Shown piece after piece: positions 721 through 17,945 of a stretch of DNA of 20,780 nt. The stretch is from Octopus sinensis (Eukaryota). Both the position numbers and the translations under genes were made by a program. The DNA lies in assembly GCF_006345805.1 (NCBI RefSeq), contig NW_021823895.1:1-20780 (forward strand). The letters run 5' to 3'. The notes beneath the pieces were generated by a model that made no database searches, was not told the DNA's origin, and saw only the letters and a list, made by a program, of their open reading frames with translations. How positions within the stretch are numbered: the first letter of the stretch is position 1; each line of letters starts with the position of its first letter.

Positions 721-817
721 GTCTTCCTTCCTACTGATGACTCGGGCGTTTGGACCCTGGCTAAAATGTGGTATAACCTGGCGGATTCCAGCTACCATCA
801 ATCTGTTGTGCACCTAG
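721..817 (+). CDS. Lipoxygenase-family gene, first exon visible in window (internal exon; VFLPTDDSGVWTLAKMWYNLADSSYHQSVVHL-G)
   Basis: Pyrimidine tract plus AG at 719-720, GT donor at 818-819. The translation has the lipoxygenase W-x-L-A-K motif and the start of the H-Q-x3-H iron-binding motif (His codons 796-798 and 811-813). Ends in phase 1, matching the next exon. Confidence 0.93.
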
Positions 818-857
<40 letters not shown>

Positions 858-865
858 TATTTTTT

Positions 866-934
866 ATTCCATCGAGGTCGACTTTTCCTTTCGTCCTTTC
901 GGGATCGATAAATCAAGTACCAGTTACGTACTGG
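866..934 (+). mobile_element. Fragment of tRNA-derived SINE with Deu/Nin-like core
   Basis: GAGGTCGACTTTTCCTTTCGTCCTTTCGGGATCGATAAATCAAGTACCAGTTACGTACTGG is near-identical to the core of the copies at 11077, 12373 and 14341. Bounded by (ATT)n and (GGT)n tracts. Confidence 0.8.
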
Positions 935-1218
935 TGGCGGTGGCGGTGTGGTGGTGGTGGTGGCGGCGAGGGGGCGATGGTAGTGGGCATGGCGGTGGCA
1001 GTGGTGGCGTCATCGGCGGTGGTGGTGGTGGTGGCGGTGGTGGCGTCATCGGCGGTGGTTGTAGTGGTGGTGGTGTTGGTGGAGGTGGTGGTGGTGGTGG
1101 TGGTGATGGTGGTGGTGGTTGTGGTGGTGGTGGTGGTAGTTGTGGTGGCGGTGGTGGTATTTGTGGTGGTGGTGGTGGTGGTGGTAGTTGTGTGGTGGTG
1201 GTGGTGGTGGTGGTAGTG
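935..1218. repeat. Imperfect (GGT)n trinucleotide microsatellite
   Basis: Direct reading. Source of the spurious poly-Gly, Pro, Val and His ORFs. Confidence 0.95.
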
Positions 1219-1437
1219 TTGATGCTGATTTTGTTGCGTATAATTTTGATATCATTCATTGTTTGAGAAATACACCAACGACGCACCGAAAGTTTAATCG
1301 AAGCGACCCACCACATACGAAAGATGCTATGATCACGGCGGTTATTCTTTTTATAACCATTGGAGAAACAACAAAACAGAGATTTGATATTCACTTGAGC
1401 CCACCGTTCTATTTTTCATGCACACATATTTATAGCT

Positions 1438-2853
1438 GTGTGGAGGCGCAATGGCCCTGTGGTTAGGGCAGCGGAATCGCGGTCATAGGATCGCGGTTTC
1501 GATTCCCAGACCGGGCGTTGTGAGTGTTTATTGAACGAAAACACCTAAAAGCTCCACGAGGTTTCCGGCAGGGATGGTGGTGATCCCTGCTATACTCTTT
1601 CACCCAACTTTCTCTCACTCTTACTTCCTGTTTCTGTTTGTACCTGTATTTCAAAGGGTCGGCCTTGTCACTCTCTGTGTCACGCTGAATATCCCCGAGA
1701 ACTACGTTAAGGGTGCACGTGTCTGTGGAGTGCTCAGCCACTTACACGTTAATTTCACGAGCAGGCTGTTCCGTTAATCGAATCAACCGGAACCTCGTCG
1801 TCGTAACCGACGGAGTGCTCCAGCAGGGGATGTGGCGATCCCTGCTGTACTCTTTCACCACAAACTTTCTCTCACTCTTCTTTCCTGTTTCTGTTGTACC
1901 TGTATTTCAAGGGGCCGGCCTTGTCACTCTCTGTGTCACGCTGAATATCCCCGAGAACTACGTTAAGGGTGCACGTGTCTGTGGAGTGCTCAGCCACTTA
2001 CACGTTAATTTCACGAGCAGGCTGTTCCGTTAATCGAATCAACCGGAACCCTCGTCGTCGTAACCGACGGAGTGCTCCAGCAGGGGATGGTGGCGATCCC
2101 TGCTGTACTCTTTCACCACAACTTTCTCTCACTCTTACTTCCTGTTTCTGTTGTACCTGTATTTCAAGGGGCCGGCTTGTCACTCTCTGTGTCACGCTGA
2201 ATATCCCCGAGACTACGTTAAGGGTGCACGTGTCTGTGGAGTGCTCAGCCCTTACACGTTAATTTCACGAGCAAGGCTGTTTTTCCGTTAATCGAATCAC
2301 CGGAACCCTCGTCGTCGTACCGACGGAGTGCTCCAGCAGGGAATGGTGGCGATCCCTGCTGTACTCTTTCACCACAACTTTCTCTCACTCTTACTTCCTG
2401 TTTCTGTTGTACCTGTATTTCAAGGGCCGGCCTTGTCACTCTCTGTGTCACGCTGAATATCCCCGAGAACTACGTTAAGGGGCACGTGTCTGTGGAGTGC
2501 TCAGCCACTTACACGTTAATTTCACGAGCAGGCTGTTCCGTTAATCGAATCAACCGGAACCCTCGTCGCGTAACCGACGGAGTGCTCCGGCAGGGATGGT
2601 GGCGATCCCTGTGCTGTACTCTTTCACCACAACTTTCTCTCACTCTTACTTCCTGTTTCTGTTGTACCTGTATTTCAGGGGCCGGCCTTTCACTCTCTGT
2701 GTCACGCTGAATATCCCCGAGAACTACGTTAAGGGTGCACGTGTCTGTGGAGTGCTCAGCCACTTACACGTTAATTTCACGAGCAGGCTGTTCCGTTGAT
2801 TCGGATCAACCGGAACCCTCATCGTCGTAACCGACGGAGTGCTTCCATCCACC
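1438..2853 (+). mobile_element. tRNA-derived SINE whose 3' ~255 bp is tandemly repeated five times, with 10-bp TSD
   Basis: A-box-like TGGCCCTGTGG and B-box-like GGTTTCGATTCC in 1438-1510. Repeat units start at about 1569, 1824, 2081, 2337 and 2591. ATTTATAGCT at 1428-1437 and 2854-2863. Confidence 0.9.
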
Positions 2854-3227
2854 ATTTATAGCTACGTAAATTTAATTTCCAAGTTAGAGGGCCGTAACTC
2901 GTAAATATAGATGATGTTTGTCATCTCCAACATGAAGCTAGAGTTATTCCCCTTGCGGACGAAGTTATCTGCGAACGAAAAATTGTCTTATAGCAAAGAT
3001 CATACGTAGCTAATTGGTCTTAAATACGGCGAGAAGTGTTTTAGACTCGATGGAATTTCACCATTGAACTTCGTTTTCGATGGCAATATTAAGTAGCAGT
3101 AGCAGTAGTACCGCTTTCTACTTGTACCACAAGGTACGAGATATAAATGGCATGAGCGACCAAGACAAAATTTGCACATACAGGAGACTAAAAACTGGAA
3201 GAAACATCACTAGGCATCTTCATATTG

Positions 3228-3237
3228 CTATATACAT

Positions 3238-3290
<53 letters not shown>

Positions 3291-3291
3291 G

Positions 3292-3333
<42 letters not shown>

Positions 3334-3392
3334 TATGTATGTATGTATTATATATATATAATATGTATGTATGTATATATATATATTTATAT
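3228..3392. repeat. Compound (TA)n/(TG)n/(TATG)n microsatellite
   Basis: Direct reading. Confidence 0.95.
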
Positions 3393-3672
3393 ATTTCAAC
3401 AATTGAGGGTAAAATTAATTAATTATAATCAGTTTCACCAAGTGTCAGTTAAGGGAAAAGGGAACCATTATAGGCGAATTCAAAATATTACATTATATAT
3501 AGGGCCTTAGTAAAATAAATTACTTTGCCACATACTGACTCATTAGAATAGCAGCTAAAGAATTCTTCAGCTATTCTAATACTTAAAGAAGATCTCTCTC
3601 AGATAGTGTTTGCCTAAACTAACTCACAAAAGTATGGGGGGAAAAACATTAAAAAATCAAGTGCAAAGGTTA

Positions 3673-3728
3673 TTTGAGAACGTACGTTTCTAGATTAGTC
3701 AATTCGACATTTCTTTCTTCAGCTCAGA
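3673..3728 (-). ncRNA. Putative type I hammerhead ribozyme (copy 1 of the 555-bp unit)
   Basis: Reverse complement of the motif at 4122-4177. CTGAAGA at 3722-3716, GAAA at 3690-3687. Stem I is 4 bp, then a mismatch, then 1 bp in this copy. Confidence 0.5.
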
Positions 3729-4121
3729 ATTCCTTGAATCGATTTGGGAACACTTAAAGTCGGGAGCATACCCTTTCGGCTTCTAATCACCTATAGAATT
3801 CTGCTCGAACTAAAAGTGCTATCAAATTCGAATATGCAAGCGAAGAATTTCTTTCTGCTCTCCCCTTTCCACCAGCGTGGGTTAAAATTGACAAACACCA
3901 TGTATTAACAGTGAAAACCGCAGAATTTAGCAAGGAGAGATGAATTATAATTTCAACAATTGAGGGTAAAATTAATTAATTATTAATCAGTTTCACCAAG
4001 TGTTCAGTATGTAAAGGGACCATTATAGGCGAATTCAAAATATTACATTATATATAAGGTGATTAGAAGTCGAAAGGGTATGCTCCCGACTTTAAGTGTT
4101 CCCAAATCCGATTCAAGGAAT

Positions 4122-4177
4122 TCTGAGCTGAAGAAAGAAATGTCGAATTGACTAATCTAGAAACGTACGTTCTCAGA
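4122..4177 (+). ncRNA. Putative type I hammerhead ribozyme (copy 2)
   Basis: Stem I TCTGAG (4122-4127) / CTCAGA (4172-4177). Core CTGAAGA (4128-4134). Stem II AGA..GTC-GAATT-GAC..TCT. GAAA (4160-4163). Stem III ACG-TA-CGT. GUU triplet, with predicted cut after 4171. The base of stem II is A.A rather than the usual G-C. Confidence 0.6.
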
Positions 4178-4671
4178 TAACCTTTGCACTTGATTTTTTA
4201 ATGTTTTTTCCCCCATACTTTTGTGAGTTAGTTTAGGCAAACACTATCTGAGAGAGATCTTCTTTAAGTATTAGAATAGCTGAAGAAATTTCTTTAGCTG
4301 CTATTTCTAATGAGTTCAGTATTGGCAAAGTATTTATTTTACTAAGCCTTATATATAATGTAATATTTGAATTCGCCTATAATGGTCCCCTTACATACTG
4401 AACACTTGGTGAAACTGATTAATAATTAATTAATTTACCACCCTCAATTGTTGAAATTATAATTCATCTCTCTTTGCTAAATTCTGCGGTTTTCACTGTT
4501 AATACCTGGTGTTTGTCAATTTTAACCCCGCTGGTGGAAAGGGGAGACGAACTTCTTCGCTTGCATATTCGAATTTGATAGCACTTTTAGTTCGAGCAGA
4601 TTCTATAGGTGATTAGAAGCCGAAAGGGTATGCTCCCGACTTTAAGTGTTCCCAAATCCGATTCAAGGAAT

Positions 4672-4727
4672 TCTGAGCTGAAGAAAGAAATGTCGAATTG
4701 ACTAATCTAGAAACGTACGTTCTCAAA
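4672..4727 (+). ncRNA. Putative type I hammerhead ribozyme (copy 3)
   Basis: Same motif 550 nt downstream. Core 4678-4684, GAAA 4710-4713, predicted cut after 4721. Stem I TGAG/CTCA plus one further pair. Confidence 0.55.
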
Positions 4728-4913
4728 TAACCTTTGCACTTGATTTTTTATGTTTTTCCCCCATACTTTTGTGAGTTAGTTTAGGCAAATACTATCTGAG
4801 AGAGATCTTCTTTAAGTATTAGAAATAGCTGAAGAAATTTCTTTAGCTGCTATTTCTAATGAGTTCAGTATGTGGCAAAGTAATTTATTTTACTAAGCCC
4901 TTATATATAATGT

Positions 4914-4933
4914 TATATATTTATATATATATT

Positions 4934-4994
<61 letters not shown>

Positions 4995-5035
4995 ATATAT
5001 ATATATATGTATGTATGTATGTATATATATATATT

Positions 5036-5078
<43 letters not shown>

Positions 5079-5144
5079 ATATATATATATATATATATTA
5101 TGTATATGTGTGTGTGTATGTATATATATATATATATATATAAA

Positions 5145-5175
<31 letters not shown>
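4914..5175. repeat. Compound (TA)n/(TG)n/(TATG)n microsatellite
   Basis: Direct reading. Confidence 0.95.
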
Positions 5176-5180
<5 letters not shown>

Positions 5181-5424
5181 CTTGAGCAAGACACTTTATT
5201 TCACGTTGCTCCAGTTCACTCAGCTGTAGAAATGAGTTGCGACGTCACTGGTGCCAAACTGTATCAGCCCCTTTGCCTTTCCCTTGGATAACACTGGTGG
5301 CGAGGGAAGGCCGGTATGCATGGGCGACTGATGGTCTTCCATAAACAACCATGCCCAGACTTGTGACTAGGAGGGTAACTTTCTAGGTGCAATCCCATGG
5401 TCAGTGTCGTGACCGACGGGGGTC
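5176..5424 (+). mobile_element. 5'-truncated SINE (conserved central domain plus distinct tail)
   Basis: GTGTTCTTGAGCAAGACACTTTATTTCACGTTGCTCCAGTTCACTCAGCTG..AAATGAGTTG matches the central part of the minus-strand SINE at 18660-18984. The downstream sequence differs from it. Confidence 0.75.
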
Positions 5425-5436
5425 CCGGATCCCGGA

Positions 5437-5472
5437 TATATAATATATATATATATATATATAATATATATA

Positions 5473-5512
<40 letters not shown>

Positions 5513-5662
5513 TATATATATATATATAATACATATATATATATATATATATATACATATGGCAAATGAAAGACGGAAGATGGAATATAAGAGAATTTAT
5601 TATAATAAATTCTTGTATATTCCATCTTACGTCTTGCATACATATACACACACCACAAACAC

Positions 5663-5709
<47 letters not shown>

Positions 5710-5712
5710 GAT

Positions 5713-5746
<34 letters not shown>

Positions 5747-5805
5747 CATGCATACATACATGCATATATATGTGTGTGTATGTGTACGTGTGTGTGTGGG
5801 TGTAT
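5437..5805. repeat. Compound (TA)n/(CA)n microsatellite containing a 66-bp palindrome at 5570-5635
   Basis: Direct reading. Arms 5570-5601 and 5604-5635 match at 29/32 positions. Confidence 0.9.
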
Positions 5806-5966
5806 CAGTTAACAACAAAATGGAAAAAAGGGAAACATTTTCTTGTTCCTATCATCAACAATGAAATGTATAAACGATTGATATCACACCGCCAACAACA
5901 GCACTTCCCCTCCAACAGCAAAGCAATAAAATTCATTAAAACCCTTTAAACGAATATATTTTGCAG

Positions 5967-6084
5967 GTTTAACTCGTTTACTGATGCAAATGGTTGTCCT
6001 TGCCCTACACAGAAACATATCTGTGTCGCATCCAGTCTACAAGATTTTGGCACCTCACACACTTTACCTTTTGGCCATCAACGA
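5967..6084 (+). CDS. Lipoxygenase exon 2 in window (LTRLLMQMVVLALHRNISVSHPVYKILAPHTLYLLAIN-D)
   Basis: ttttgcAG acceptor (5965-5966), GTgagt donor (6085). The split codon G+GT = Gly joins exon 1. Contains the H-P-V-x-K-I-L-x-P-H lipoxygenase signature and LAIN. The expected His ligand codon is CGT (Arg, 5975-5977). Confidence 0.93.
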
Positions 6085-6616
6085 GTGAGTTCTGTTTTTG
6101 TATTTGATTTTTGTCTTTATTTTCTTTTGTCTTTCTGGCATTTTTTTCTCTTGTAATAGCAAGAGAGAACCTCTAATTTCCAGTCGCATTCTTCACAATT
6201 TGCCAACAATAAAAATTAAGGAAACAAATTTTTAAGTAGTAATATAAATGTTTGGTAAGATCAGTTGCTGTAAGGAGTTATGAAATATTTTTCAGATTGC
6301 CAAAAGTGCTAAAATGCATAGCCAAATCTTGCTCAGATTATATCTTACGTGTCTTAAATATATGAAAGACAAACTAGATGAAGTTATCCTTGAGGTACTT
6401 TCTGTCTGTATGCTATACCTAGGGACAATGGTGGTCATAGAACGCCATGTCAAAATCTGAGAGTTCAAACTTGGCCTTGGAGAAACAGAAAAGTGATTAC
6501 ACGTAGAGACTCCTCAAACACACGGCCGAATAAATTTTAATATAAGGAAACTCGTTCATGTGACATCAAGGCATGACCAATCTATAGCGAGTTTCTGTTA
6601 TATTTTATCAAACATC

Positions 6617-6647
<31 letters not shown>

Positions 6648-6664
6648 ATATATATTATATATAT

Positions 6665-6932
6665 GTATAACGGGAAGGTTTACGAAAATAAACAAAAGCG
6701 AAGGCAGGTAGAGTACAAACAAACAAATGTATTAGTATGGGCGCTCAGGAACAGAAATAAAACAAGTCTTTTACGTTTCGAGCCTACGCTCTTCGACAGA
6801 AAGATACACAGAAAAGAAACAAGGAGAGAAAAAAAATGCGTGTAGGAGCTAACGATCCAACATGGCGTTCTGATTTCAGGCAGAAGTCAGATATCAGAGG
6901 TCACACGTTAGACGCTAGAGGGATAGTAGGGG
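6665..6932 (-). mobile_element. (TA)n-embedded non-coding insert with minimal hammerhead variant (Penelope-like element fragment)
   Basis: (TA)n on both sides. The minus strand at 6804-6767 reads TCTTT-CTGTCGA-A-GAGC(GTAG)GCTC-GAAAC-GTA-AAAGA. Shares TATTAGTAT..CGCTCAGGAA and ACGTTTCGAGC..GCTCTTCG with the insert at 17101. Confidence 0.6.
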
Positions 6933-7364
6933 ATATATATATATATATATATATATACACCGCTTTGAATTTTGGCGCTCGCTGTTCAACGGTTATTTTT
7001 CCTCCAAGAACCAGTGGGAAGCAAGCTAACTCTTTAACCCGGATTAATTTGTGAATTCCCCTGAAGAGGAACGAAACCTTATTGGTTAAATTTCGAAGTC
7101 ATATGATAGGATCAAGTTACTTAATTCATCGAGTTTTATCTCGCTGGAAAAAGATGTTGTGGCTTGCTACTCGTAGTCCCTTTGGAAACTTCATGAGGTT
7201 GGCGATTTTGTGTGAGTACTGGAGTTATATTTCTAGCAATTGTAGATGCTGCTTTGCACCCTTATTCACGTATTCTACCTTTTTTGTCTTTATTTGCTTT
7301 AGCCACCTATTTTTTTATTCCTTTTTTAAAATTTTTTTTTATTCCTTTGATTTTATTTTTCCAG

Positions 7365-7457
7365 TTTTGCATTTGAAAAACTAGTATCGACTGAAGGTTT
7401 GGTCGATAAAGTAATGGCGATTGGACGAGATGGAATGTACGAACTTATCCATAACAG
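7365..7457 (+). CDS. Lipoxygenase exon 3 in window (FAFEKLVSTEGLVDKVMAIGRDGMYELIHN-S)
   Basis: T-rich tract plus ccAG (7363-7364), GTatgt donor (7458). Phase 2 at both ends. Fits the lipoxygenase arched-helix segment that follows LAIN. Confidence 0.9.
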
Positions 7458-7817
7458 GTATGTTATAAACGCAAATTATCCTGTGTCACCTGTGTCGTTG
7501 ATGAGGTTCAACAGATAGGTGTGAACATAGGTGTATTCAATAAGCAATAGGAAGCGCCCAGTCGCATGCTCTTACGTGAGAGTTGAGTCCAGTTTGTCTA
7601 AGCTTGGACTGTCATGTAATCACTCCGTGGCTGTTTCTTTCTTTTCTGGTAATCTATGTATAGGTCTGTGTGTGTGGTGGGGGGTGTCTCTCTCTGAATA
7701 TCTGCATGTTTTTTCTGTGTGCGTATATATCTACTATCTACTATTATATCTAATTTCCTTTGGATATACACGTTTTATATGCATCCGTACTGACTTTCTC
7801 ATTTGTAATGCTTTTAT

Positions 7818-8065
7818 TATACATATACATACATATATATATATGTATAATATATATATATATATAATATATACATATTATATATATAATACATATATAT
7901 ACATATATATATATACATATACATATATATATATGCATTATATATATATATATTATAATATATATCTATATATATATACATACATACATCATACATACAT
8001 ACATACATACATGCATACATATATAAAAGGAAGTATGTATTCTTATATGTATAAACTATTATATT
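7818..8065. repeat. (TA)n/(CATA)n microsatellite
   Basis: Direct reading. Confidence 0.95.
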
Positions 8066-8078
8066 TATTATTACTATA

Positions 8079-9363
8079 CGAGGGGCGTTTCAATAAGTAA
8101 TGCCTCTGACCCACTTGCCTTTGTTTGATCTAGCTGAAATTTTGCATGTGCACTTATTGATATTTCTATAGATTAAGTGGCAAATTATAGCTCCGAACTA
8201 ATTGTGGTTTCTGATTTACAGGTGTTTGAAATGAGTCCAAGTGGGAAATGGAGCATGTTTGAGTGTCGAGCAGTGATCCGGTTTTTGTATTTGAAATGAC
8301 GCACACCACAGGAGACTTTTAAGAAATGAAAGTAACTTATGGTGATGATGCCCCATCATGACCTTGTAAAACGCTGGCATCGTGAATTCAAACATGGTCG
8401 GAACTCTGTGGAAACAGCTCCCAGATCTGGTCGCACCCCTTCTGCCATTGATGAGGCATCGTCCGTCAAGTTGAGGCTGCCATTTTGGAAGATCGACGCA
8501 TAACTATTCGCCAAATAGCCCATGAGGTCAAGATTAGTACCGGGTCTGTGGAAACTATCATTCATACCATTTGCATATGCAAAAGGTGTCTGCCAGATGG
8601 ATTTCCAGGTTGCTCACACTTTTCCAGAAGCAAAACGCAAGAATTCCAGAAGCAAGAATTTAGGGATGTGCCAAGAAGATGAGTCAAAATTTTTCAAAAG
8701 ACTGATTACACAGGATGAGATTGGGTCCATCACTATGATCCAGAGACCCAAGCCCAGTCAATGCAGTGGAAGCACCATGACTCAGCTCCTCCAAAGAAGG
8801 CAAGGGTGCAGCCCTCCGCGGCAAGGTCATGCTCACAGTCTTCTGGGACCAGGACGGAGTAGTGATGACAGATTTCCTGGCAAGGGTACCACAATTACAG
8901 GAGCCTATCATGTTTCACTTTTGAGGAAATTAAGAGAAGCTATCGAAACCAAGAGGCGGGGCAAGATCAGCAAAGGCATCCTCGTCCTGCAGGACAACGC
9001 TCCGGTCCAGAACTCGCGTGTCGCCAGATCAGAAGCACAGGCGTGCGGCTATGAACTCTTCCCCCATCCCCCTACTCTCCCTGACCTTGCACACCCTCTA
9101 TTTCACCTCTTCCCAGCCATGAAGTTATTTTGAAAGGAAAGTGTTTCCCAGATGATGCAGCCTTGATTTCTGAAGTCACGTCGTGGTTGGAGACCAAGCT
9201 GGGTTCTTCTACGAAAACGGTCTCCAGAACTGCATCAAACGATGGGAGAAATGCGTACCTCTGGGTTGTTCCTATGTGGAAAAAGACTAATACCTGTGCC
9301 AAGTTTCGTTGCTCTACTGCTATGGGAAGTGGGTCAGGGGCATTACTTATTGAACGCCCCTCG
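8079..9363 (+). mobile_element. Full-length mariner (Tc1/mariner) transposon
   Basis: TIRs CGAGGGGCGTTTCAATAAGTAATGCCTCTGACCCACT (8079-8115) and its reverse complement at 9328-9363, differing by 1 indel and 1 mismatch. TA on both sides (8077-8078, 9364-9365). 1285 bp. The TIR start resembles the Hsmar2/irritans type (recalled similarity). Confidence 0.95.
8248..9290 (+). pseudogene. Mariner transposase, multiply frameshifted
   Basis: Fragments across frames: ECRAVIRFLYLK (HTH), APRSGRTP, RRITIRQIA, ARWISRLL (WVPRxL-like), LITQDE, VFWD..G, LQDNAP and PHPP..PDLA, which are the mariner DDD motifs. Several frameshifts, and a stop near 8288. Confidence 0.9.
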
Positions 9364-9409
9364 TAAATGATATTCAAATAGTATGTATATGTGTGTGTGT
9401 GTGTGTGTG

Positions 9410-9443
<34 letters not shown>

Positions 9444-9474
9444 ATGTATGTATGTATGTATATGAATATATATA

Positions 9475-9674
9475 TTAGGTTGGTGCATAATTATTGCGGC
9501 TTTTTTCAATAAATTTTATTCTACAAAAACAATAACAACATTTAACAAAAACATATTTAAATGCTTATTCCGGACCATATTCACCATCTACTTCAATTTC
9601 TGCTTGGCATTTTGTGTAATTTTTGGGGGTGAATAGCATTTATTGAAAAAAAAGCCGCAGTAATTATACACCAG

Positions 9675-9679
<5 letters not shown>
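9475..9679 (-). mobile_element. Mariner-derived MITE or internal deletion derivative (Hsmar1/MADE1-like TIR)
   Basis: TIRs 9475-9514 (TTAGGTTGGTGCATAATTATTGCGGCTTTT...) and 9638-9679, with TA on both flanks. The minus strand at 9612-9565 encodes KCQAEIEVDGEYGPE*, like a mariner transposase C-terminus. Confidence 0.88.
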
Positions 9680-9737
<58 letters not shown>

Positions 9738-9739
<2 letters not shown>

Positions 9740-9936
9740 GGAGTAAACACATAAATGTGAAACAAGGTGGAAAAAAAGAGTACTCAAATACCAGTGGTAG
9801 AGTAATATGCTTTATTTAAAGCAGCAGAAAATTCCATAAAACCTGTTACTCTGAGTTTCGCAAAAACTGTCCGACGAACGGCAACGCGAAACTCAGAGTA
9901 ACAGGTTTTGTGGAATTTTCTGCTGCTTTAATGAAG
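9738..9936 (+). mobile_element. (TA)n-embedded insert with 45-bp inverted repeat and hammerhead variant (Penelope-like element fragment)
   Basis: Arms 9817-9861 and 9886-9930 match at 44/45 positions with a 24-nt loop. The + strand at 9867-9904 reads CTGT-CCGACGA-ACG(GCAA)CGC-GAAACTC-A-GAGTA-ACAG. Long (TA)n on both sides. Confidence 0.6.
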
Positions 9937-10022
<86 letters not shown>

Positions 10023-10077
10023 TTATAATAATAATAATATATGTATATATATATATATATATGATATATCCTTATAG

Positions 10078-10138
10078 TTCACACGAATGGAACTTTTCAA
10101 GTGACGGACATCCAGCTACTGATTTTGAAAACCGAAAA
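10078..10138 (+). CDS. Lipoxygenase exon 4 in window (SHEWNFSSDGHPATDFENRK)
   Basis: cttatAG acceptor (10076-10077), GTaagc donor (10139). Phase 2 start and phase 0 end exactly bridge exons 3 and 5. Fits the W-x-F...P-x-D-x3-R segment of lipoxygenases. Confidence 0.85.
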
Positions 10139-11076
10139 GTAAGCCTTTCTCTTTTTCTTGATTTCTCAGAGTTCTAATTTCAAATCCTGCGGTTCCAACT
10201 ATAAATTTATGTTCACAGTTTCGATGTTAGTAAAGAATTGCTAGTTTAGATTAGATAAATGGAATTACTAGAACCAGAGCGAAGTGGCTTTCAGTATTTC
10301 TTCTGAGTCTTTGTATCCGGACAACAACACCTGAAACGGCTGTCATTCCAACATCTCTCGGCCTTGTCTTGCCTTTTGGACGGCATCGGTGGCGGGAGAT
10401 GAGAGACTTGCATACGTGAATATCTGTGTAGTCTTGCATTAAAATAAAAATATTTGCCCAAGTCTGTGACAGAAGACTTCCAGTTTCAGAAACATAATAT
10501 CACATGACATTGGGTGGCTACTGTTATGATATATTTTAATAATGAACCGGAGATTACTGGAAAGAAATGTATTTCTCATCGGGCATTTTCTGATTGCTTC
10601 GTTTCTTACCAGTTCTTTTAAGAAATTTTTCCACAACGCAGTATTTTTTTTTTCTTGTAGGTAATAGATTTTATCCATTAAATGTATTTTTCTTGGAATT
10701 TTCTTGAAAACCCCTCACCTGGTAACTTTTTTCTTTTGGAGAAAGCGTTTCATTTTCAGACGAATATTTTTATGGCTTTTTTCTATAATTGAAAATCTCA
10801 TCTGATGTATCCGGGTTTCCAATAGAAGGTTCATACTCATAGTTATCTCCTGAGTTCGACATCTGGCGTAATTTGTAAAAGAAAGAAAAAACAGAAAATG
10901 AAAACGAGAAATGCCGAGAATTGATGTATAACGATATCTGTGACAGGTTTTGAAATTATATGCTTTGGACGAGTTTACTTGTTACACTCTGAAAAAGACA
11001 AATAAGTGAAGACAATTCGTCTTTGCCGGGTAAGGGGTTAAACAATTCATCAACAATGGTAATATAGTCAACACGT

Positions 11077-11696
11077 AAGGCGGCGAACAGGCAGAATCGT
11101 TAGCACGCCGGACGAAAGGCGTAGCCGTATTTCGTCTGCCGTTACGTTCAGAGTTCAAATTCCGCCGAGGTCGACTTTGCCTTTCATCCCTTCGGGGTCG
11201 ATAAATTAAGTACCAGTTACGCACTGGGGTCGATTTAAGTCGACTTAGTCCGTGTATCTGTCCTTGCTTGTCCTCTCTGTGTTGTGGGTAGTAAAGAAAT
11301 AGAAATAGGTATTTCGTCTGCCGTTATGTTCTGAGTTCAAATTCCGCCGAGGTCGACTTTGCCTTTCATCCTTTCGGAGTCGATAAATTAAATACCAGTT
11401 ACGCACTGGGATCGATATAATCGACTTAATCCGTTTGTCTGTCCTTCTTTGTCCCCTCTATGTTTAGCCCCTTGTGGGCAATAAAGAAATAAGAATCGAT
11501 AGCCCACCGGGCGAAATGCTTAGTGGTATTTCGTCTGTCTTTGCGTTCTGTGTTTAAATTCCGCCGAGGTCGACTTTTCCTTTCATCCTTTCGGAGTCGA
11601 TAAATAAAGTACTAGTTGCGTACTGGGGTTAATCCAATCGACTGCCCCACCCACCCAACAAAATTTTGAGCTTTATGCCTGGAGTAGAAAAGAATA
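11077..11696 (+). mobile_element. Three tandem units of the tRNA-derived Deu/Nin-like-core SINE
   Basis: Head AAGGCGGCGAACAGGCAGAA (A box) and GAGTTCAAATTCC (B box), core GCCTTTCATCCTTTCGG.GTCGATAAATTAA.TACCAG. Units at about 11077-11308, 11309-11493 and 11494-11696. Confidence 0.9.
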
Positions 11697-11764
11697 TAAG
11701 CAACACGTTTCTCTGGCGCAACTCAGTTTCGTTGAGAACATATTCCTCTGCTTTCTAATTTCAG

Positions 11765-11870
11765 GTTGACGACCCGAAAGTTTTACCCAAATACTATTTC
11801 AGAGATGATTCGCTTGTATTGTACAACGCAATACATAAGTATGTCTCAAGCTACATAGATATCTACTATG
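11765..11870 (+). CDS. Lipoxygenase exon 5 in window (VDDPKVLPKYYFRDDSLVLYNAIHKYVSSYIDIYY-A)
   Basis: tttcAG acceptor (11763-11764), GTaatt donor (11871). Contains the conserved LP-x-Y-x-[YF]-RDD and YY motifs. Confidence 0.93.
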
Positions 11871-11915
11871 GTAATTATATCGGTTTGGTTTATTTCTTTT
11901 ATGTTATATGTATTA

Positions 11916-11945
11916 CTAGCAGAGTTACCCAGCGTTGCCCGAGTT
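11916..11945 (-). mobile_element. 3' terminus of a non-autonomous Helitron (5' end not located)
   Basis: The minus strand reads CTCGGGCAACGCTGGGTAACTCTGCTAG followed by T, the same hairpin plus CTAG end as the elements at 15003 and 15897. The body probably extends rightwards towards about 12370. Confidence 0.65.
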
Positions 11946-12372
11946 ACATACAATTGAAGAATTAGACTTTTCTGTTATATTTTCTGTAATGAACTGGAAT
12001 ACCTATGTTTCGAATTTCATCAAAATTGCAGATGAGGGTTATTTCCCTCTTTATACACCCTGAAAAAAATTGTAATCGTGCCACATGTATCCCATACTAA
12101 TGATTGTTATGCGCATATTCCAAAATTCCAGTCTCATAGAACCTGTTGAAAGGATTTTGCTCCTGAAAAATGGAGGTGATGGAGCTCTAAAATGTGAGAG
12201 TTAAGGCCCCTGTTGGGGTGGGCATCTTAATGTGAACCAGAGAAGTTGAATTGTTGAGAATCTTTTTAACTTGGGTCTTATATCTTTGAGAAAACTTGTA
12301 AAGAAGACGTGCCACACGGAATAAATACCAGAAGTCAGTACACAATCGCAGCATACATAGCGTCCTGTTGAT

Positions 12373-12782
12373 AAGGCGGTGAGCTGGCAGAAACGTTAGC
12401 ACGCCTGGCGGTATTTCGTCAGTCTTTACGTTGTGAGTTCAATTTCCGCGGATGTCAACTTTTCCTTTCATCCTTTCGGGATCAATTAAATAAGTACCAG
12501 TTACGCACTGGGATCGATATAATCGACTTAATCCGTCTGTCTGTCCTTGTTTGTCCCCTCTGTGTTTAGCCCCTTGTGGGTAGTAAAGAAATAAGTATTT
12601 CATCTGTCTTTACGTTCTGAGTTCAAATTCCGCCGAGGTCAACTTTGCCTTTCACTCTTTCGGGATCGATTAAATAAGTACCAGCTACGCACTGGGGTCG
12701 ATATAATCGACCTAATCCGTTCGTCTGTCCTTGTTTGTCCTCTGTGTTTAGCCCCTTGTGGGTAGTAAAGAAATAGAAATAG
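12373..12782 (+). mobile_element. Dimeric Deu/Nin-like-core SINE
   Basis: Head AAGGCGGTGAGCTGGCAGAA. The second unit starts at GTATTTC (12595), directly after AAAGAAATAA. Confidence 0.9.
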
Positions 12783-13049
12783 ATATATAGGGAGCGGCAG
12801 AAAGCAACTTACTGCCACGTTGGGGACAGAACACGTGACGCAAGAGCAGCAGATGAATCCATTTCTTTTCTTTTTATCGATTTAGAAATTGAAAAACGAA
12901 TTGAAGGAACGAGAATCTGTTACAGATGACCGCTTTTTTACTTTTAATTTGTTTTTGTTTTTTGGGGGGTTTTTTTGTCAAAACTGAAACCATACTATAT
13001 TTGTACAGGACTTTTTCTAATTATATTTCTGTTTTAATTACAAATTCAG

Positions 13050-13135
13050 CTGATGAAAACGATGTAAATAATGACTGGGAGATACAAAACTGGATCGAAA
13101 GTTTAGCCGTAGGACACGAGAATGGAGGTTTAGAG
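13050..13135 (+). CDS. Lipoxygenase exon 6 in window (DENDVNNDWEIQNWIESLAVGHENGGLE)
   Basis: ttcAG acceptor (13048-13049), GTaaat donor (13136). Has the D-x-E-[IL]-Q-x-W motif. Phase 1 start, phase 0 end. Confidence 0.9.
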
Positions 13136-13306
13136 GTAAATGATGTTTATAATTATTGGAGACTGGTTGTTGTTGTTGTTACTGTTGTTGTCCGTGAACT
13201 TGTATAAAATTAGGGTTCCTTATTTTTCTCAACATCCCTACGCCGGACCGTTCCACCTGTTAGTTCTATAAGTCAACACACCTTTATTATTACAACCTTT
13301 TTACAG

Positions 13307-13489
13307 GGTTTACCAATGAAAGATGGCAAAGGTCACGTGTCTTCAAAGGAAGAATTAAAAGAGATTCTAGCCATAATTATCTTCACCTGTAGCGTGACAC
13401 ATGCCGCTGTCAATTTCCTGCAGTATGAAGAATATGGTTTCCCTGCAAATTATCCAGCGACACTAAACACACCATTGTTAAAAGACAAA
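13307..13489 (+). CDS. Lipoxygenase exon 7 in window (GLPMKDGKGHVSSKEELKEILAIIIFTCSVTHAAVNFLQYEEYGFPANYPATLNTPLLKDK)
   Basis: ttttacAG acceptor (13305-13306), GTaagt donor (13490). IIFTCS..HAAVNF.QY motif with iron ligands His (13400-13402) and Asn (13412-13414) intact. Confidence 0.95.
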
Positions 13490-13933
13490 GTAAGTTTATT
13501 TTTCGTTTTTTTTTATAGAATAATATTTGATATAGCTTGTTAATGAGTGCTAGTGTGCGATAATAAAATATGCAATATGTGATAATATGATCATGTATTA
13601 ATTTATAACATGTAATAACGTGTGATAATGCATTGCAACTTTAGGAATAATGCCTACGTAAAGTACTTTCAATACAGTAAAAATAAGAGGCCCCACAACA
13701 AACCACAGCACATACCCAAGGCTTACAGAGCTGCACCCGGTAGTGCAGTGAAAGCATGTGATAAAAAAATCCGAAACCTCATTCGTATCAGTATTAGTTT
13801 CCTAGCTAAATATCTAACGTCAATTATTTTAACAAAATGTGGTATTTTCAATTCCTTATTATTGATAGTTTGAATTAAAGATTGGTTTATTTTCCTCTTT
13901 CTTCTTTTCGTTTTCGCCATTTTACATCGATAG

Positions 13934-14097
13934 GATCCTAAAACGGAGAGCGATATCATTGCTGCTCTCCCTAATAAAGAAGAAACTTTCAACATGGTGA
14001 CACTCACACGCATACTCAGTGAAAGAGCAACTAAGTCGTTGGGTAATTTTGAAACACAGTATATCTACGACCCGAAAGCAGTTGGCTGTGTCAAATG
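13934..14097 (+). CDS. Lipoxygenase exon 8 in window (DPKTESDIIAALPNKEETFNMVTLTRILSERATKSLGNFETQYIYDPKAVGCVK-C)
   Basis: cgatAG acceptor (13932-13933), GTaagt donor (14098). Open in the required phase, with the LP...LS...LG pattern of the lipoxygenase C-terminal region. Confidence 0.9.
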
Positions 14098-14340
14098 GTA
14101 AGTATAAATATTAAATTGTACGAAAATATATATACAAGGCCATGTGATATTAGGAGGCTCTCCAATACGTCATAATGTTGTGTTCATTAATATGTGATAA
14201 CGTAATATGTGATAACAATGGTTAATGTGATGTGGTGTGAGAACGTGATATGATACGATAATGATAAAGTGAGTAAACATTTAATAACGTGGAAATGGTG
14301 TCATAATTTGTGATGGCATCATATGTGATACCATGTAATA

Positions 14341-14554
14341 ATCTTTTCTACTCTAGGCACAAGGCTGGAAATTTGGGGGGAGGGGGCCAGTCGATTAGAT
14401 CGACCCAAGTGTGCAACTGGTATTTCATTTATCGACCTCGAAAGGATGAGAGGCAAAATCGACCTCCTCGGAATTTGAACTCAGAACGTAAAGACAGACG
14501 TAATACTGCTAAGCATTTCGCCCTGCATGTTAACGTTTCTGCCAGCTCACCGCC
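14341..14554 (-). mobile_element. Monomeric Deu/Nin-like-core SINE
   Basis: The reverse complement begins GGCGGTGAGCTGGCAGAAACGTTAAC and has the GAGTTCAAATTCC B box, the core, and the ..GTGCCTAGAGTAGAAAAGAT tail also seen in the third unit at 11494. Confidence 0.9.
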
Positions 14555-15002
14555 GTAGATACATGAAATATATATGTGACATTGTGTAGCATATATGTGA
14601 AAATGCAAGAATATATTACGTAATAACATGTGAGATCAGTATTATCTGTTAATATCATATAATGTATGGTGTTAACGTGAGATGGTATGTGTTAATACGA
14701 CATATAATATGTAATACTATGTGATAATCAATGATAATATACGGCAATGCAGTAATATGCGATTAATATACAATAGTATGCAATAAAGAAATAATGTTAT
14801 ATCTTAATATCTGCAAGTATTGGATAGCAGTATGTGATAAATTTCATAAAAAGAAATCGTATTATAACGTGGCAACATGTGATATGTCGTGTTATATGTC
14901 AATATGGATTAATACGTGATATAATGTGATAATGTGATAACATCTGATATAAATGACAACAGTATATTGTCATGTATACCATATAGAGTGTTCTTGTGCT
15001 AA

Positions 15003-15394
15003 TCTCTCTCTATATAAAGCTGAAGTTGTCTGTGTATGGCAAGTTTGGTAGCTTTCAACTAACAGTATCTCCTCAGAGACTCTGTGGTGCAAGTTGACCA
15101 AAATTGAAAGTATGATAGAAGAAGGCTTGTTCTTCCTTCCGTAAGAGAAGAAATTCAAATCGGACCATGTTAACACCAAAAATTATTTACATCAAAAAGG
15201 TGCTTTTTTTCTATGAAAATCTCTATATTTTACGATTTTTTGACTGCTGTGTCGCCATTTTTCGGTGTATTTCAACCAGAAAAATGTTCACTTAAAGAGA
15301 ATAACAAGCTACATAATGCAAAACTTTTACTTTTTAAAAATTCCACTTCTAAAGGGTCCAAACAAAACCGAGCAACGCCGGGCGATACTGCTAG
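15003..15394 (+). mobile_element. Non-autonomous Helitron
   Basis: Starts TC after A (15002), has the subterminal GC-rich hairpin CCGAGCAACGCCGG, and ends CTAG before T (15395). No TSD. 392 bp. Confidence 0.8.
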
Positions 15395-15735
15395 TGTTTG
15401 ATAATGTTTGATAATATATTTAAAATGTGTGAATTTGTATGACTGAGTGTGAAAACGGGAATATGTGAAAATTTTATTATGTTTGATAAAAATGTTAAGT
15501 TTTAATGTTTAACAATATGAAAATTATAAAATATCTGAGACTGGCGAAGAGCAAGTGATAAAACCTTGGTACATTTTATTCTTGACTGGCACCGTTTAGA
15601 TGAAAAACTGACAAGGTCTCAGTGGTGGATACTACCAAATGTGCTCTGTACACAGACAGAATTTAATCTGTATTAAAATCTCGTTATATTTTTCTTATTT
15701 CTTTTTTCTTCTCGTTCTCTCTTTTTCTATTTTAG

Positions 15736-15850
15736 TTTCCAGTCAGATTTGAAAAGAATTAGTGACGAAATTAGAAGAAGAAACAAGACCTTAGAGAAAC
15801 CTTACGAAGTCTTGGACCCTGTCAACATTCCTAATGCTATCAGCATTTAA
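15736..15850 (+). CDS. Lipoxygenase terminal exon (FQSDLKRISDEIRRRNKTLEKPYEVLDPVNIPNAISI*)
   Basis: Long pyrimidine tract plus tttAG (15734-15735). F-x2-L-x2-I-x3-I-x2-RN...PY-x2-L-x-P and a C-terminal PNAISI whose Ile carboxylate is the usual iron ligand. TAA at 15848-15850. The nine exons total 1023 nt = 340 codons plus stop. Confidence 0.95.
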
Positions 15851-17100: not shown

Positions 17101-17305
17101 AAAGTTAATCCAAACAAGAAAGCACAAAAAAAACACAATAACGCGAGGACGTGTAACAAATATTAGTATTATTGGACGCTCAGGAAAGAGGAGGGATTAA
17201 CGTTTCGAGCGGAGCTCTTCGTCGGAAACATAGGAGAAGCAAAGATCCAGAGAAGGGAAGACAGAGGAAAAAAATCGCCAACGATACACACGCGGTCACA
17301 TTTTG
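17101..17305 (-). mobile_element. (TA)n-embedded insert with degenerate hammerhead variant, related to the 6665 insert
   Basis: The minus strand at 17225-17199 reads CCGACGA-A-GAGC(TCC)GCTC-GAAAC-GTT, but stem I is only 2 bp. (TA)n on both sides. Confidence 0.55.
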
Positions 17306-17322
17306 ATATATATATATTAGAT

Positions 17323-17361
<39 letters not shown>

Positions 17362-17496
17362 AAGGAGCTTCTACAGGACTAGAACTGTTTCATTCAAAAT
17401 AAATCGATGATTTCTTTTGAATGAAACAGTTACTCTGCTAGGTATTGAGTACCTTATTTAACTGTGGTTAACCCCGACTCAACCGGGACCTACCTA

Positions 17497-17543
<47 letters not shown>

Positions 17544-17655
17544 TATTATATATTTATATTATATATTCATATATATTATATATTCATATATATCATATAT
17601 ATTATATATATATATATTATATATTATATTATATATATATATATATATATATTAT

Positions 17656-17686
<31 letters not shown>

Positions 17687-17720
17687 ATATATGATAAACA
17701 ATGACGTTAGCTATTAAACG

Positions 17721-17945
17721 TGTGTAAAATGTGGAAGGATGTGCTTCTCAGTTGGAGATCTAAAAAGACATGTTAAGAGAGTGCGTATGGTGGCACCTGT
17801 GTCTCCTGCCAGTCAGCACAGTTGTCTACAATGTAATAAAATGAGTAAAAGCGTGACTGGGCTATAAAATCATATAAGGGCATCACTTATCATTCTGTTG
17901 CCCCTCTGCGATCAGTGAGGGACCTCCGTGGAACGAGGGCCTTAT
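17721..17945 (+). pseudogene. Degenerate tandem C2H2 zinc-finger coding remnant (LINE 3' end or ZNF fragment)
   Basis: The frame starting at 17721 gives CVKCGRMCFSVGDLKRHVKRVR..CLQCNKMSKSVTGL*NHIRAS. That is two C-x2-C-x9-L-x2-H units, with an in-frame TAA at 17865-17867. Confidence 0.6.

What the first reader, a model, noticed from the sequence alone, without database searches (positions are those of the whole stretch)
721..15850. Intact lipoxygenase gene lacking an iron-ligand histidine: candidate pseudoenzyme
Seen: nine canonical exons splice into 340 stop-free codons, and WxLAK, HPVYKILAPH, RDD, HAAVN and the C-terminal Ile are all retained. The motif that normally reads H-[EQ]-x3-H-x4-H-x3-E reads HQSVVHLGLTRLLMQ. 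The third His is Arg (CGT, 5975-5977) and the Glu is Gln (CAA, 5987-5989). Established: this His is one of the three His ligands of the catalytic non-heme iron (equivalent to soybean LOX-1 H504). Inference: two changes on one helix in an otherwise conserved gene suggest a protein kept for a non-catalytic role such as lipid binding, scaffolding or structure. Cephalopods have recruited other enzymes as low-activity lens crystallins (GST as S-crystallin, ALDH as omega-crystallin). I cannot tell whether this family has already been described.
Basis: partly seen in the sequence, partly recalled or inferred. Interest (0 to 1): 0.82.

Follow-up and report, generated by a model that had tools for sequence, protein, structure and literature searches.

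The report
Octopus lipoxygenase fragment, iron-ligand His→Arg
The window is a short unplaced Octopus sinensis scaffold holding only the back half of an already annotated lipoxygenase gene, in which a single A-to-G change turns one iron-binding histidine into arginine; the protein would probably be catalytically dead, but nothing here shows it has been kept for a new role.

Summary
The sequence observation holds. Nine GT-AG exons (721-15850) splice into 340 stop-free codons of a lipoxygenase (LOX) catalytic domain. CGT (Arg) sits at 5975-5977, where every solved LOX and all five related octopus gene copies examined (four CAT codons read from DNA) have the second iron-ligand His.

Three parts of the finding do not hold:
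- **Not an intact gene.** The window is a whole 20,780-bp unplaced O. sinensis scaffold. It carries only Pfam LOX positions 326-654 of 673. It is already annotated as XP_029653740.2.
- **Glu→Gln is not specific.** The His-keeping octopus cluster paralogues seen across this exon also have Gln. One helix change is unique to this gene, not two.
- **Not a decayed or remodelled copy.** This is the slowest-evolving member of its octopus clade. Of 85 family-conserved columns, it alone deviates at two (H36R, R322L). Its branch dN/dS is about 0.3-0.4. An intact frame allows only about 0.04-0.08 neutral substitutions per site.

My best reading is a recent loss-of-catalysis substitution in one copy of a birth-and-death tandem family, either fixed or a single allele. 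A selectively retained pseudoenzyme remains possible, because ligand-less LOX homologues with Arg at the same column exist in amphioxus, Lingula and a barnacle. No orthologue, transcript or reads could be reached. The crystallin idea has no support.

The parts
721..817 (+). Exon 1 of the part present. It is an internal exon of the full gene and encodes VFLPTDD...WTLAK...HQSVVHL(G). The first ligand His31 is CAC at 811-813.
   Evidence: Acceptor cag, donor gt. 82-88% identical to paralogue exons in L001, L002, L003 and L008.
5967..6084 (+). Exon 2, encoding (G)LTRLLMQ...HPVYKILAPH...AIN(D). It contains the Arg codon that replaces the second iron-ligand His.
   Evidence: There is only one copy of this exon in the window, and no alternative or mutually exclusive exon.
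5975..5977 (+). CGT = Arg36, at the position of the iron ligand (soybean LOX-1 H504, 5-LOX H372, 8R-LOX H389). All four related copies read at the DNA level have CAT, so this is a single A-to-G transition.
5987..5989 (+). CAA = Gln40 where most LOX have Glu. It is shared with the His-keeping octopus cluster-C paralogues, so it is not specific to this gene.
7365..7457 (+). Exon 3, encoding FAFEKL...VDKVMAIGRDGMYELIHN.
10078..10138 (+). Exon 4, encoding SHEWNFSSDGHPATDFENRK.
11765..11870 (+). Exon 5, encoding VDDPKVLPKYYFRDDSL...
13050..13135 (+). Exon 6, encoding DENDVNNDWEIQNWIESLAVGHENGGLE.
13307..13489 (+). Exon 7, encoding GLPMKDGKGH...FTCSVTHAAVNF... The third ligand His219 is CAT at 13400-13402. 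The fifth ligand Asn223 is AAT at 13412-13414. Both are retained.
13934..14097 (+). Exon 8.
15736..15850 (+). Exon 9, ending ...IPNAISI. The C-terminal Ile340, whose carboxylate is the iron ligand, is at 15845-15847. The TAA stop is at 15848-15850.

Best explanation
The window holds the 3' half of a real, long-constrained lipoxygenase paralogue from the octopus-specific LOX expansion. It is sister to the tandem 'cluster C' genes on O. sinensis chromosome CM016867.1 and O. vulgaris OX597823.1.

In this assembly one A-to-G transition (CAT to CGT) replaces the second iron-ligand His with Arg. If translated, the protein would fold as a LOX catalytic domain but could not hold the catalytic non-heme iron, so it would have no dioxygenase activity.

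The change is most likely recent. It may be a newly fixed inactivating mutation or a loss-of-function allele of the sequenced animal. It arose in one redundant member of a birth-and-death gene family. It is not the signature of a protein remodelled for a new non-catalytic job.

Shown: the exon structure, the substitution, the family placement, the rate pattern and the bound on neutral time. Inferred: loss of iron and activity, recency, and redundancy as the reason the change is tolerated.
For: 1. The substitution is real in the assembly and is a single transition relative to CAT in the four related copies read as DNA. L008 also keeps His at the protein level.
2. The position is the iron ligand, shown by alignment to solved LOX. 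Ligand lists are in PMC11593649 and PMC5113960. The latter also states that iron deficiency abolishes 5-LOX activity.
3. This copy is the most conservative of its clade.
   - Tajima-type counts give fewer WIN-unique than paralogue-unique changes in 22 of 22 comparisons, 8 of them with p<0.05.
   - Of 85 columns at least 88% conserved in 17 non-octopus LOX, it alone deviates only at H36R and R322L. P0002 and P0003 have 8-9 private deviations each.
   - The other ligands His31, His219, Asn223 and Ile340 are intact.
4. The WIN branch has dN about 0.11, dS about 0.28-0.37 and dN/dS about 0.29-0.41. That is no higher than the His-keeping sister branch at 0.40-0.52.
5. 155 of 3,060 possible single-base changes give stops. 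With 34 splice-site bases added, an intact frame has probability of at least 0.05 only for about 0.035-0.08 or fewer neutral substitutions per site. That is roughly the per-lineage O. sinensis/O. bimaculoides divergence (pairwise dS about 0.10-0.125).
6. The family visibly turns over.
   - The P0029 locus has an in-frame TAG in exon 3.
   - P0003 is flagged LOW QUALITY.
   - The O. vulgaris L001 copy has Asn-to-Asp at the fifth ligand.
   - Several tandem copies exist.
Against: - The age of the substitution could not be measured. No orthologue of this copy, no transcript and no reads were reachable. The O. vulgaris loci L001 and L008 hold only cluster-C copies.
- dN/dS below 1 with retention of all other features is equally what a selectively maintained dead enzyme would show.
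- Ligand-less LOX homologues that persist across species exist in other phyla, with Arg at this same column. A pseudoenzyme fate is therefore not exotic for this family.
- Retention of only three or four other ligand residues is weak statistical evidence for recency.
Confidence: 0.45

Rival explanations
1. Selectively retained pseudoenzyme. The His-to-Arg change is fixed and old enough to matter. The iron-free LOX fold is kept for a non-catalytic role, such as lipid binding, or regulating active LOX paralogues by heterodimerisation. The Arg guanidinium may fill the empty metal site.
For: - The frame and all splice sites are intact, and branch dN/dS is about 0.3-0.4.
- LOX homologues lacking ligands recur. 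Seven of about 165 representative homologues lack His at this column. Four of them have Arg: two amphioxus entries (P0075 and P0031, 82% identical to each other), Lingula P0129 and barnacle P0102.
- The B. floridae model P0031 and the B. belcheri-type forms (P0075, P0181, P0182) share the same substitutions at the two ligand positions that P0031 covers.
- Iron-free, catalytically inactive human 5-LOX isoforms are stable and modulate the wild-type enzyme (PMC5113960).
Against: - The ligand-less homologues elsewhere have lost several ligands and often the C-terminal Ile. Here only one residue differs.
- The copy is more conserved at catalytic and family-invariant columns than its His-keeping sisters. 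That is unexpected if catalysis had been dispensable for long.
- The supposed second supporting change, Glu to Gln, is a clade trait.
- There is no expression, orthologue or full-length evidence, and nothing on lens or any other tissue.
Confidence: 0.27
2. Assembly or consensus error. The true codon in the animal is CAT, and the gene encodes an ordinary active lipoxygenase.
For: - The scaffold is a 20.8-kb unplaced piece.
- Neighbouring LOX models in the same assembly needed correction or carry stops: P0003 is flagged LOW QUALITY and L003 has a TAG in exon 3.
- Everything except one base looks like a normal, well-conserved active LOX.
Against: - Errors in long-read assemblies are mostly indels, and the 1,023-nt frame has none.
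- A substitution error landing on one of about a dozen ligand-defining bases is improbable a priori, although the finding was picked after the fact.
Confidence: 0.15
3. Still an active oxygenase. The metal is held by the remaining ligands (His31, His219, Asn223, Ile340 carboxylate) plus water, or another residue compensates.
For: - The LOX coordination sphere tolerates variation at the fifth position. ALOX15B uses four protein ligands and two waters (PMC11593649).
- All other ligands and active-site motifs are retained.
Against: - The three His positions are close to invariant. 158 of 165 covered representative homologues have His here.
- From my own knowledge of the classic mutagenesis on 5-LOX, soybean LOX-1 and 12-LOX, cited as refs 31-32 in PMC5113960 but not read here: replacing this His abolishes iron binding and activity.
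- A protonated Arg is not a metal ligand.
Confidence: 0.05

Closest known systems
Animal arachidonate lipoxygenases (Pfam PF00305); closest solved structures are coral 8R-LOX (2fnq, 3fg1) and 11R-LOX (3vf1), then human ALOX15B and ALOX5
   Same: - Clear homology: E about 1e-61 to 8R-LOX and 8e-52 to PF00305.
- Same helix motifs, and the same ligand positions His31, His219, Asn223 and C-terminal Ile.
- By my own positional mapping from remembered landmarks, not a tool result: Ala at the Coffa position (INDFAF), and Val-Met where rabbit 15-LOX has the Sloane pair Ile-Met.
   Different: - Arg replaces the second His ligand.
- Only the C-terminal half of the domain is present in the sequence.
- Gln replaces the helix Glu, a difference shared with octopus sisters.
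Octopus tandem LOX cluster C (O. sinensis P0002, P0003, P0029 on CM016867.1; O. vulgaris copies in L001 and L008 on OX597823.1)
   Same: - Identical nine-exon structure. Exon sizes are identical apart from exon 6 (86 against 83 nt).
- Shared derived features: LMQ, INDFAFEKL, and the LPMKDGKGHVSSKE insertion.
- The same (ATT)n microsatellite after the exon-1 donor.
- Closest by dS, about 0.7-0.78.
   Different: - Only 57-61% amino-acid identity.
- Cluster C keeps CAT (His) but evolves faster and deviates at more conserved columns.
Lineage-A octopod LOX (Argonauta hians GAB1601975.1 = P0033, 673 aa; O. bimaculoides gene in L005)
   Same: - Highest overall identity, 62-64%.
- Many shared ancestral residues: NISVSHP.YKILAPHTLYLLAIN, FETQYIYDPKA and RRRN.TLEK...VLDPVNIPNAISI.
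   Different: - Lineage A has THLLME, keeping both His and Glu.
- dS to the window gene is about 1.1-1.3, so it is not the orthologue.
Ligand-less LOX-like proteins of amphioxus (P0075, P0181, P0182, P0031), Lingula (P0129, P0183) and the barnacle Amphibalanus (P0102)
   Same: Arg at the same ligand column within a recognisable LOX domain.
   Different: - They have lost two or more further ligand residues, and the amphioxus and barnacle forms also lack the C-terminal Ile. Lingula keeps it.
- They are only 33-36% identical to the window protein.
- I found no paper describing them.
Iron-free splice isoforms of human 5-LOX (Δ4, Δ13)
   Same: LOX proteins that lack iron and activity but are stable, with proposed regulatory effects on the active enzyme (PMC5113960).
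   Different: They arise by exon skipping from an active gene, not from a ligand substitution in a separate paralogue.

Membership tests
Lipoxygenase family (PF00305) | Significant match to the LOX catalytic-domain profile | tested here: met
   177 bits against a cut-off of 23.6, E = 8e-52, but only profile positions 326-654 of 673. E about 1e-61 to solved 8R-LOX.
Lipoxygenase family (PF00305) | Full two-domain architecture (N-terminal PLAT/C2-like domain plus complete catalytic domain) | tested here: not met
   - No upstream exons lie in 1-720, and the scaffold ends there.
- The only orphan N-terminal half found in O. sinensis (P0186, on a 14-kb scaffold) has dS of about 0.1 to the O. bimaculoides lineage-A gene. 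It therefore most likely belongs to another paralogue.
- Absence from the scaffold does not prove absence from the genome.
Catalytically competent iron lipoxygenase | Three His ligands plus the C-terminal carboxylate (plus Asn, His or Ser) | tested here: not met
   His31, His219, Asn223 and Ile340 are present. The second His is Arg36, CGT at 5975-5977.
Catalytically competent iron lipoxygenase | Iron content and dioxygenase activity | not testable with these tools
   This needs recombinant full-length protein, and the 5' half is unknown.
Pseudoenzyme (selectively retained dead homologue) | Loss of a catalytic residue | tested here: met
Pseudoenzyme (selectively retained dead homologue) | The substitution is fixed and conserved in orthologues, with purifying selection after the loss | tested here: inconclusive
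   - No orthologue was found in the protein collections or in about 150 kb of the O. vulgaris cluster.
- Whole-branch dN/dS of 0.29-0.41 cannot be split into before and after the change.
Pseudoenzyme (selectively retained dead homologue) | Expressed as a protein | not testable with these tools
   - No transcript-derived relative closer than 58% appears in the collection.
- An 'allene oxide synthase-lipoxygenase protein' is reported in O. vulgaris skin mucus (PMC11431876), but the paralogue is not identified.
Processed or decayed pseudogene | Stops, frameshifts, lost splice sites, or dN/dS near 1 | tested here: not met
   - 340 codons are open, and 17 of 17 splice dinucleotides are canonical.
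- dN/dS is 0.3-0.4.
- Neutral time is bounded at about 0.04-0.08 substitutions per site.
Cephalopod enzyme-derived lens crystallin | High lens expression of a recruited enzyme homologue | not tested
   No expression data are reachable. No paper links LOX to cephalopod lens.

The most novel reading that the evidence does not exclude
This gene is the earliest stage of a recurrent but undescribed class: iron-free lipoxygenase pseudoenzymes. In them Arg replaces the second ligand His. The same substitution is seen independently in amphioxus, Lingula and a barnacle. The LOX fold would be kept for lipid binding or for regulating active paralogues. In a coleoid, His-to-Arg (CAU to CGU) is also exactly the recoding that A-to-I editing would make in the CAT-bearing paralogues. 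The genomic G could therefore be a hard-wired form of an 'off' state. That last point is pure speculation.
Probability: 0.2. Interest if true: 0.6.

Novelty: new member of a known kind. Interest (0 to 1): 0.3.

Why it matters
As it stands, this is an annotated partial LOX paralogue with one unusual residue. It is worth a database note, not a discovery.

It would matter if the Arg proves fixed and conserved. LOX pseudoenzymes are not described in the literature I could search, yet ligand-less LOX homologues appear in several invertebrate phyla. An octopus copy differing from an active enzyme by a single residue would then be a clean natural experiment. An R-to-H revertant could show what an iron-free LOX fold does.

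Tried and rejected
- **Alternative or mutually exclusive exon 2 carrying His.** tblastn of the protein and of paralogues against the window finds only one copy of that exon.
- **Upstream exons within 1-720.** None found.
- **A near-identical placed copy, which would make the scaffold a haplotig.** No protein above 62% identity exists other than the window's own model. Only interspersed repeats match the fetched chromosome loci at high identity.
- **Orthologue hunting through neighbouring genes.**
  - The P0025 and P0002 gene ranges were too long to fetch.
  - L001, L002, L003 and L008 hold only cluster-C copies.
  - L004 (P0020) is a more distant paralogue.
  - L005 is lineage A, with dS about 1.1.
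- **Pairing the window with the orphan N-terminal scaffold P0186/L006.** Rejected. P0186 has dS about 0.1 to the O. bimaculoides lineage-A gene, while the window has dS about 1.1 to that gene's 3' half.
- **Logan contig L007 (SRR11869390) as a possible transcript.** It reads through into the intron after the large first coding exon, so it is unspliced. Its source organism could not be identified.
- **Rfam scan of the window.** Nothing found.
- **Literature.** No paper on LOX pseudoenzymes or on the octopus LOX gene family.
- **Structure prediction.** Not run. A half-domain model without metal would not show where the Arg side chain sits.

Full report
**What the window is**

The best database hit is the window's own product. 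P0001 is NCBI XP_029653740.2, 'allene oxide synthase-lipoxygenase protein-like [Octopus sinensis]', 351 aa. It is encoded on a contig of exactly 20,780 bp. The window is therefore a complete, short, unplaced scaffold of assembly GCA_006345805.1.

**Checking the observation**

Six-frame translation and tblastn with the paralogues give nine exons, every one with an AG acceptor and a GT donor:
- 721-817
- 5967-6084
- 7365-7457
- 10078-10138
- 11765-11870
- 13050-13135
- 13307-13489
- 13934-14097
- 15736-15850

Spliced, they give 340 codons plus TAA. The product equals P0001 without the model's invented start MKLFQCFISLQ.

- The motif reads HQSVVHLGLTRLLMQ, with CGT at 5975-5977 and CAA at 5987-5989.
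- In the HMMER alignment to coral 8R-LOX, Arg36 lies under the second ligand His (…hqlnthllrtHltte…).
- The alignment offsets place Arg36 at soybean LOX-1 H504, 5-LOX H372 and ALOX15B H378.
- These are listed as iron ligands in PMC11593649 and PMC5113960.
- The other ligands are present: His31 (811-813), His219 (13400-13402), Asn223 (13412-13414) and Ile340 (15845-15847).

So the core observation is correct.

**What is not correct**

First, the gene is not intact in the sequence.
- The protein covers only Pfam PF00305 positions 326-654 of 673. That corresponds to residues 367-698 of the 699-residue 8R-LOX chain.
- No earlier exon lies in 1-720, and the scaffold ends there.

Second, Gln in place of the helix Glu is not special to this gene.
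- The octopus cluster paralogues that cover this exon read LTH[ML]LMQ. They keep His and also have Gln.
- Only lineage A (O. bimaculoides L005, Argonauta P0033) keeps Glu.
- Exactly one helix change is lineage-specific. It is a single A-to-G transition relative to CAT in the four other gene copies read at the DNA level.

**Family context**

Octopus LOX genes fall into at least three lineages.

*Lineage A.*
- It is a compact gene of about 14 kb in O. bimaculoides (L005).
- Its counterpart is the 673-aa Argonauta hians protein P0033.
- Its O. sinensis N-terminal half sits on another orphan scaffold (P0186/L006).

*Cluster C.*
- It is a tandem array of very long genes, 40-230 kb each. It lies on O. 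sinensis CM016867.1 and O. vulgaris OX597823.1.
- The O. vulgaris copy in L001 has the same nine-exon layout as the window. Exon sizes are identical apart from exon 6 (86 against 83 nt).
- It even has the same (ATT)n repeat after the exon-1 donor.

*The window gene.*
- It groups with cluster C in a neighbour-joining tree.
- By dS it is also closest to C: about 0.7-0.78 to C and 1.07-1.29 to A.

The family is turning over.
- The P0029 locus has an in-frame TAG in exon 3.
- P0003 is a LOW QUALITY model.
- The O. vulgaris L001 copy has Asp at the fifth-ligand Asn.

**Rate evidence**

- Pairwise dN/dS between the window gene and a cluster-C copy is 0.33-0.41.
- Three-taxon branch estimates give dN about 0.11, dS about 0.28-0.37 and ω about 0.29-0.41 for the window branch. 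The cluster-C branch has ω about 0.40-0.52. The lineage-A-plus-stem branch has ω about 0.14-0.17.
- At the protein level the window copy has fewer private changes than P0002 or P0003 against all 11 outgroups, 22 of 22 comparisons, 8 of them with p<0.05.
- Of 85 columns at least 88% conserved among 17 non-octopus LOX, it deviates at 8. Six of those are shared with its sisters. The private ones are H36R and R322L. P0002 and P0003 deviate at 14 and 15.
- The copy that lost the ligand is therefore the best-preserved LOX of its clade.

**How long could it have been unconstrained?**

- 155 of the 3,060 possible single-base changes create a stop.
- Adding the 34 splice-site bases, the chance of an intact structure falls to 5% at 0.035-0.08 neutral substitutions per site. 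Indels are ignored, and they would tighten the bound.
- That is 10-25% of the branch. It is about the per-lineage O. sinensis/O. bimaculoides divergence (pairwise dS about 0.10-0.125).
- An old pseudogene is excluded. A very young one is not.

**Interpretation**

By established LOX chemistry, a protein with Arg here should not hold the catalytic iron.
- 158 of 165 covered representative homologues have His at this column.
- Iron loss abolishes 5-LOX activity (PMC5113960).
- The classic His-mutant papers are cited there as refs 31-32. I know them from memory and did not read them here.

What cannot be decided is whether the change is old and selected or recent. Three points favour recency:
- a single private ligand change;
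- stronger conservation of family-invariant columns than in the His-keeping sisters;
- a family in which copies are plainly being lost.

Three points favour a retained pseudoenzyme:
- ω below 1 with an intact structure;
- precedent from other phyla. Among the best 150 representatives plus the first hits, seven lack His at this column. Four of them have Arg: two amphioxus entries (P0075 and P0031), Lingula P0129 and barnacle P0102;
- the B. floridae model P0031 and the B. belcheri-type forms share the substitutions at the two ligand positions P0031 covers, at 82% identity.

Those proteins have lost several ligands, however, not just one.

I put the possibilities as follows:
- recent inactivation, including a segregating allele: 0.45
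- retained pseudoenzyme: 0.27
- consensus error: 0.15
- residual activity: 0.05
- unassigned: 0.08

**Comparison with what is known, and novelty**

- The gene is already annotated. It is a member of the LOX family by homology, but it fails the ligand test for a competent enzyme.
- I found no paper on LOX pseudoenzymes or on octopus LOX genes.
- The only octopus LOX mention was an 'allene oxide synthase-lipoxygenase protein' in O. vulgaris skin mucus, with the paralogue unspecified.
- Nothing supports a crystallin role.
- The finding is a reasonable lead of modest interest.
- The more general lead is the recurrent His-to-Arg in ligand-less LOX homologues across phyla.

**Limits**

- No octopus reads, RNA-seq or whole genomes were searchable.
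- Orthologue absence means only 'not in the protein collections and not in the ~300 kb of octopus LOX loci fetched'.
- dS near 1 for lineage A is close to saturation, so the branch values are rough.

Noticed in passing
P0075/P0181/P0182/P0031 (Branchiostoma), P0129/P0183 (Lingula anatina), P0102 (Amphibalanus amphitrite): These LOX homologues lack iron ligands and have Arg at the same column as the window's Arg36. Amphioxus has Asn, Arg and Arg at the three His positions and no C-terminal Ile. The B. floridae model P0031 covers only the first two positions and shares Asn and Arg with the B. belcheri-type forms, at 82% identity. This looks like an undescribed class of conserved ligand-less LOX proteins.
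   Followed up: partly
L003:50150-50296 (O. sinensis CM016867.1, P0029 locus): Exon 3 of this cluster-C copy carries an in-frame TAG (GGA TAG GAG, against GGA TCA GAG in O. vulgaris L001). It is either a pseudogenised tandem copy or an assembly error.
   Followed up: partly
L001:60764-60946 (O. vulgaris OX597823.1): This cluster-C copy reads SHAAVDF, with Asp instead of the fifth-ligand Asn. The O. sinensis counterpart P0003 and the second O. vulgaris copy L008 have Asn.
   Followed up: no
window 8177-9360 (+), inside intron 3: A frameshifted remnant of a mariner-type transposase (…HHYDPETQAQSMQWKHH…). It gives weak Pfam Transposase_1 and HTH hits below the cut-off.
   Followed up: partly
window 818-~860; L001:37138-; L005 just after the gap 17199-17818: An (ATT)n microsatellite directly after the exon-1 donor in the window and in O. 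vulgaris L001. O. bimaculoides L005 has a similar trinucleotide repeat just after the gap that hides its exon 1. The repeat thus appears in paralogues that differ by dS of 0.7-1.2.
   Followed up: no
window 932-1218, 1564-2843, 12411-12775: Intron repeats: (TGG)n of about 97 copies, a 256-bp unit repeated 5 times at 94% identity (also present on scaffold L004), and a 184-bp unit repeated twice.
   Followed up: no
window 19844-20250: A roughly 400-bp interspersed repeat found at 87-95% identity in every octopus LOX locus fetched (L001-L004), several copies each. It is probably an abundant SINE-like element. There was no Rfam hit.
   Followed up: no
L006:4846-13141 (O. sinensis VCDQ01012356.1) against L005:10001-17083 (O. 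bimaculoides): The N-terminal (PLAT) half of the lineage-A LOX has dS of about 0.10-0.125 but dN/dS of 0.7-0.9 between the two species, which is nearly neutral or adaptive. Its first 160 or so codons lie in one exon. Lineage A is compact (about 14 kb), while cluster-C genes span 40-230 kb.
   Followed up: partly
window exons against L005 and L001: Exon-wise identity is mosaic. Exons 2, 3, 6, 8 and 9 are closer to lineage A. Exons 4, 5 and 7 are closer to cluster C. This could reflect gene conversion among paralogues, or only the uneven acceleration of cluster C.
   Followed up: no
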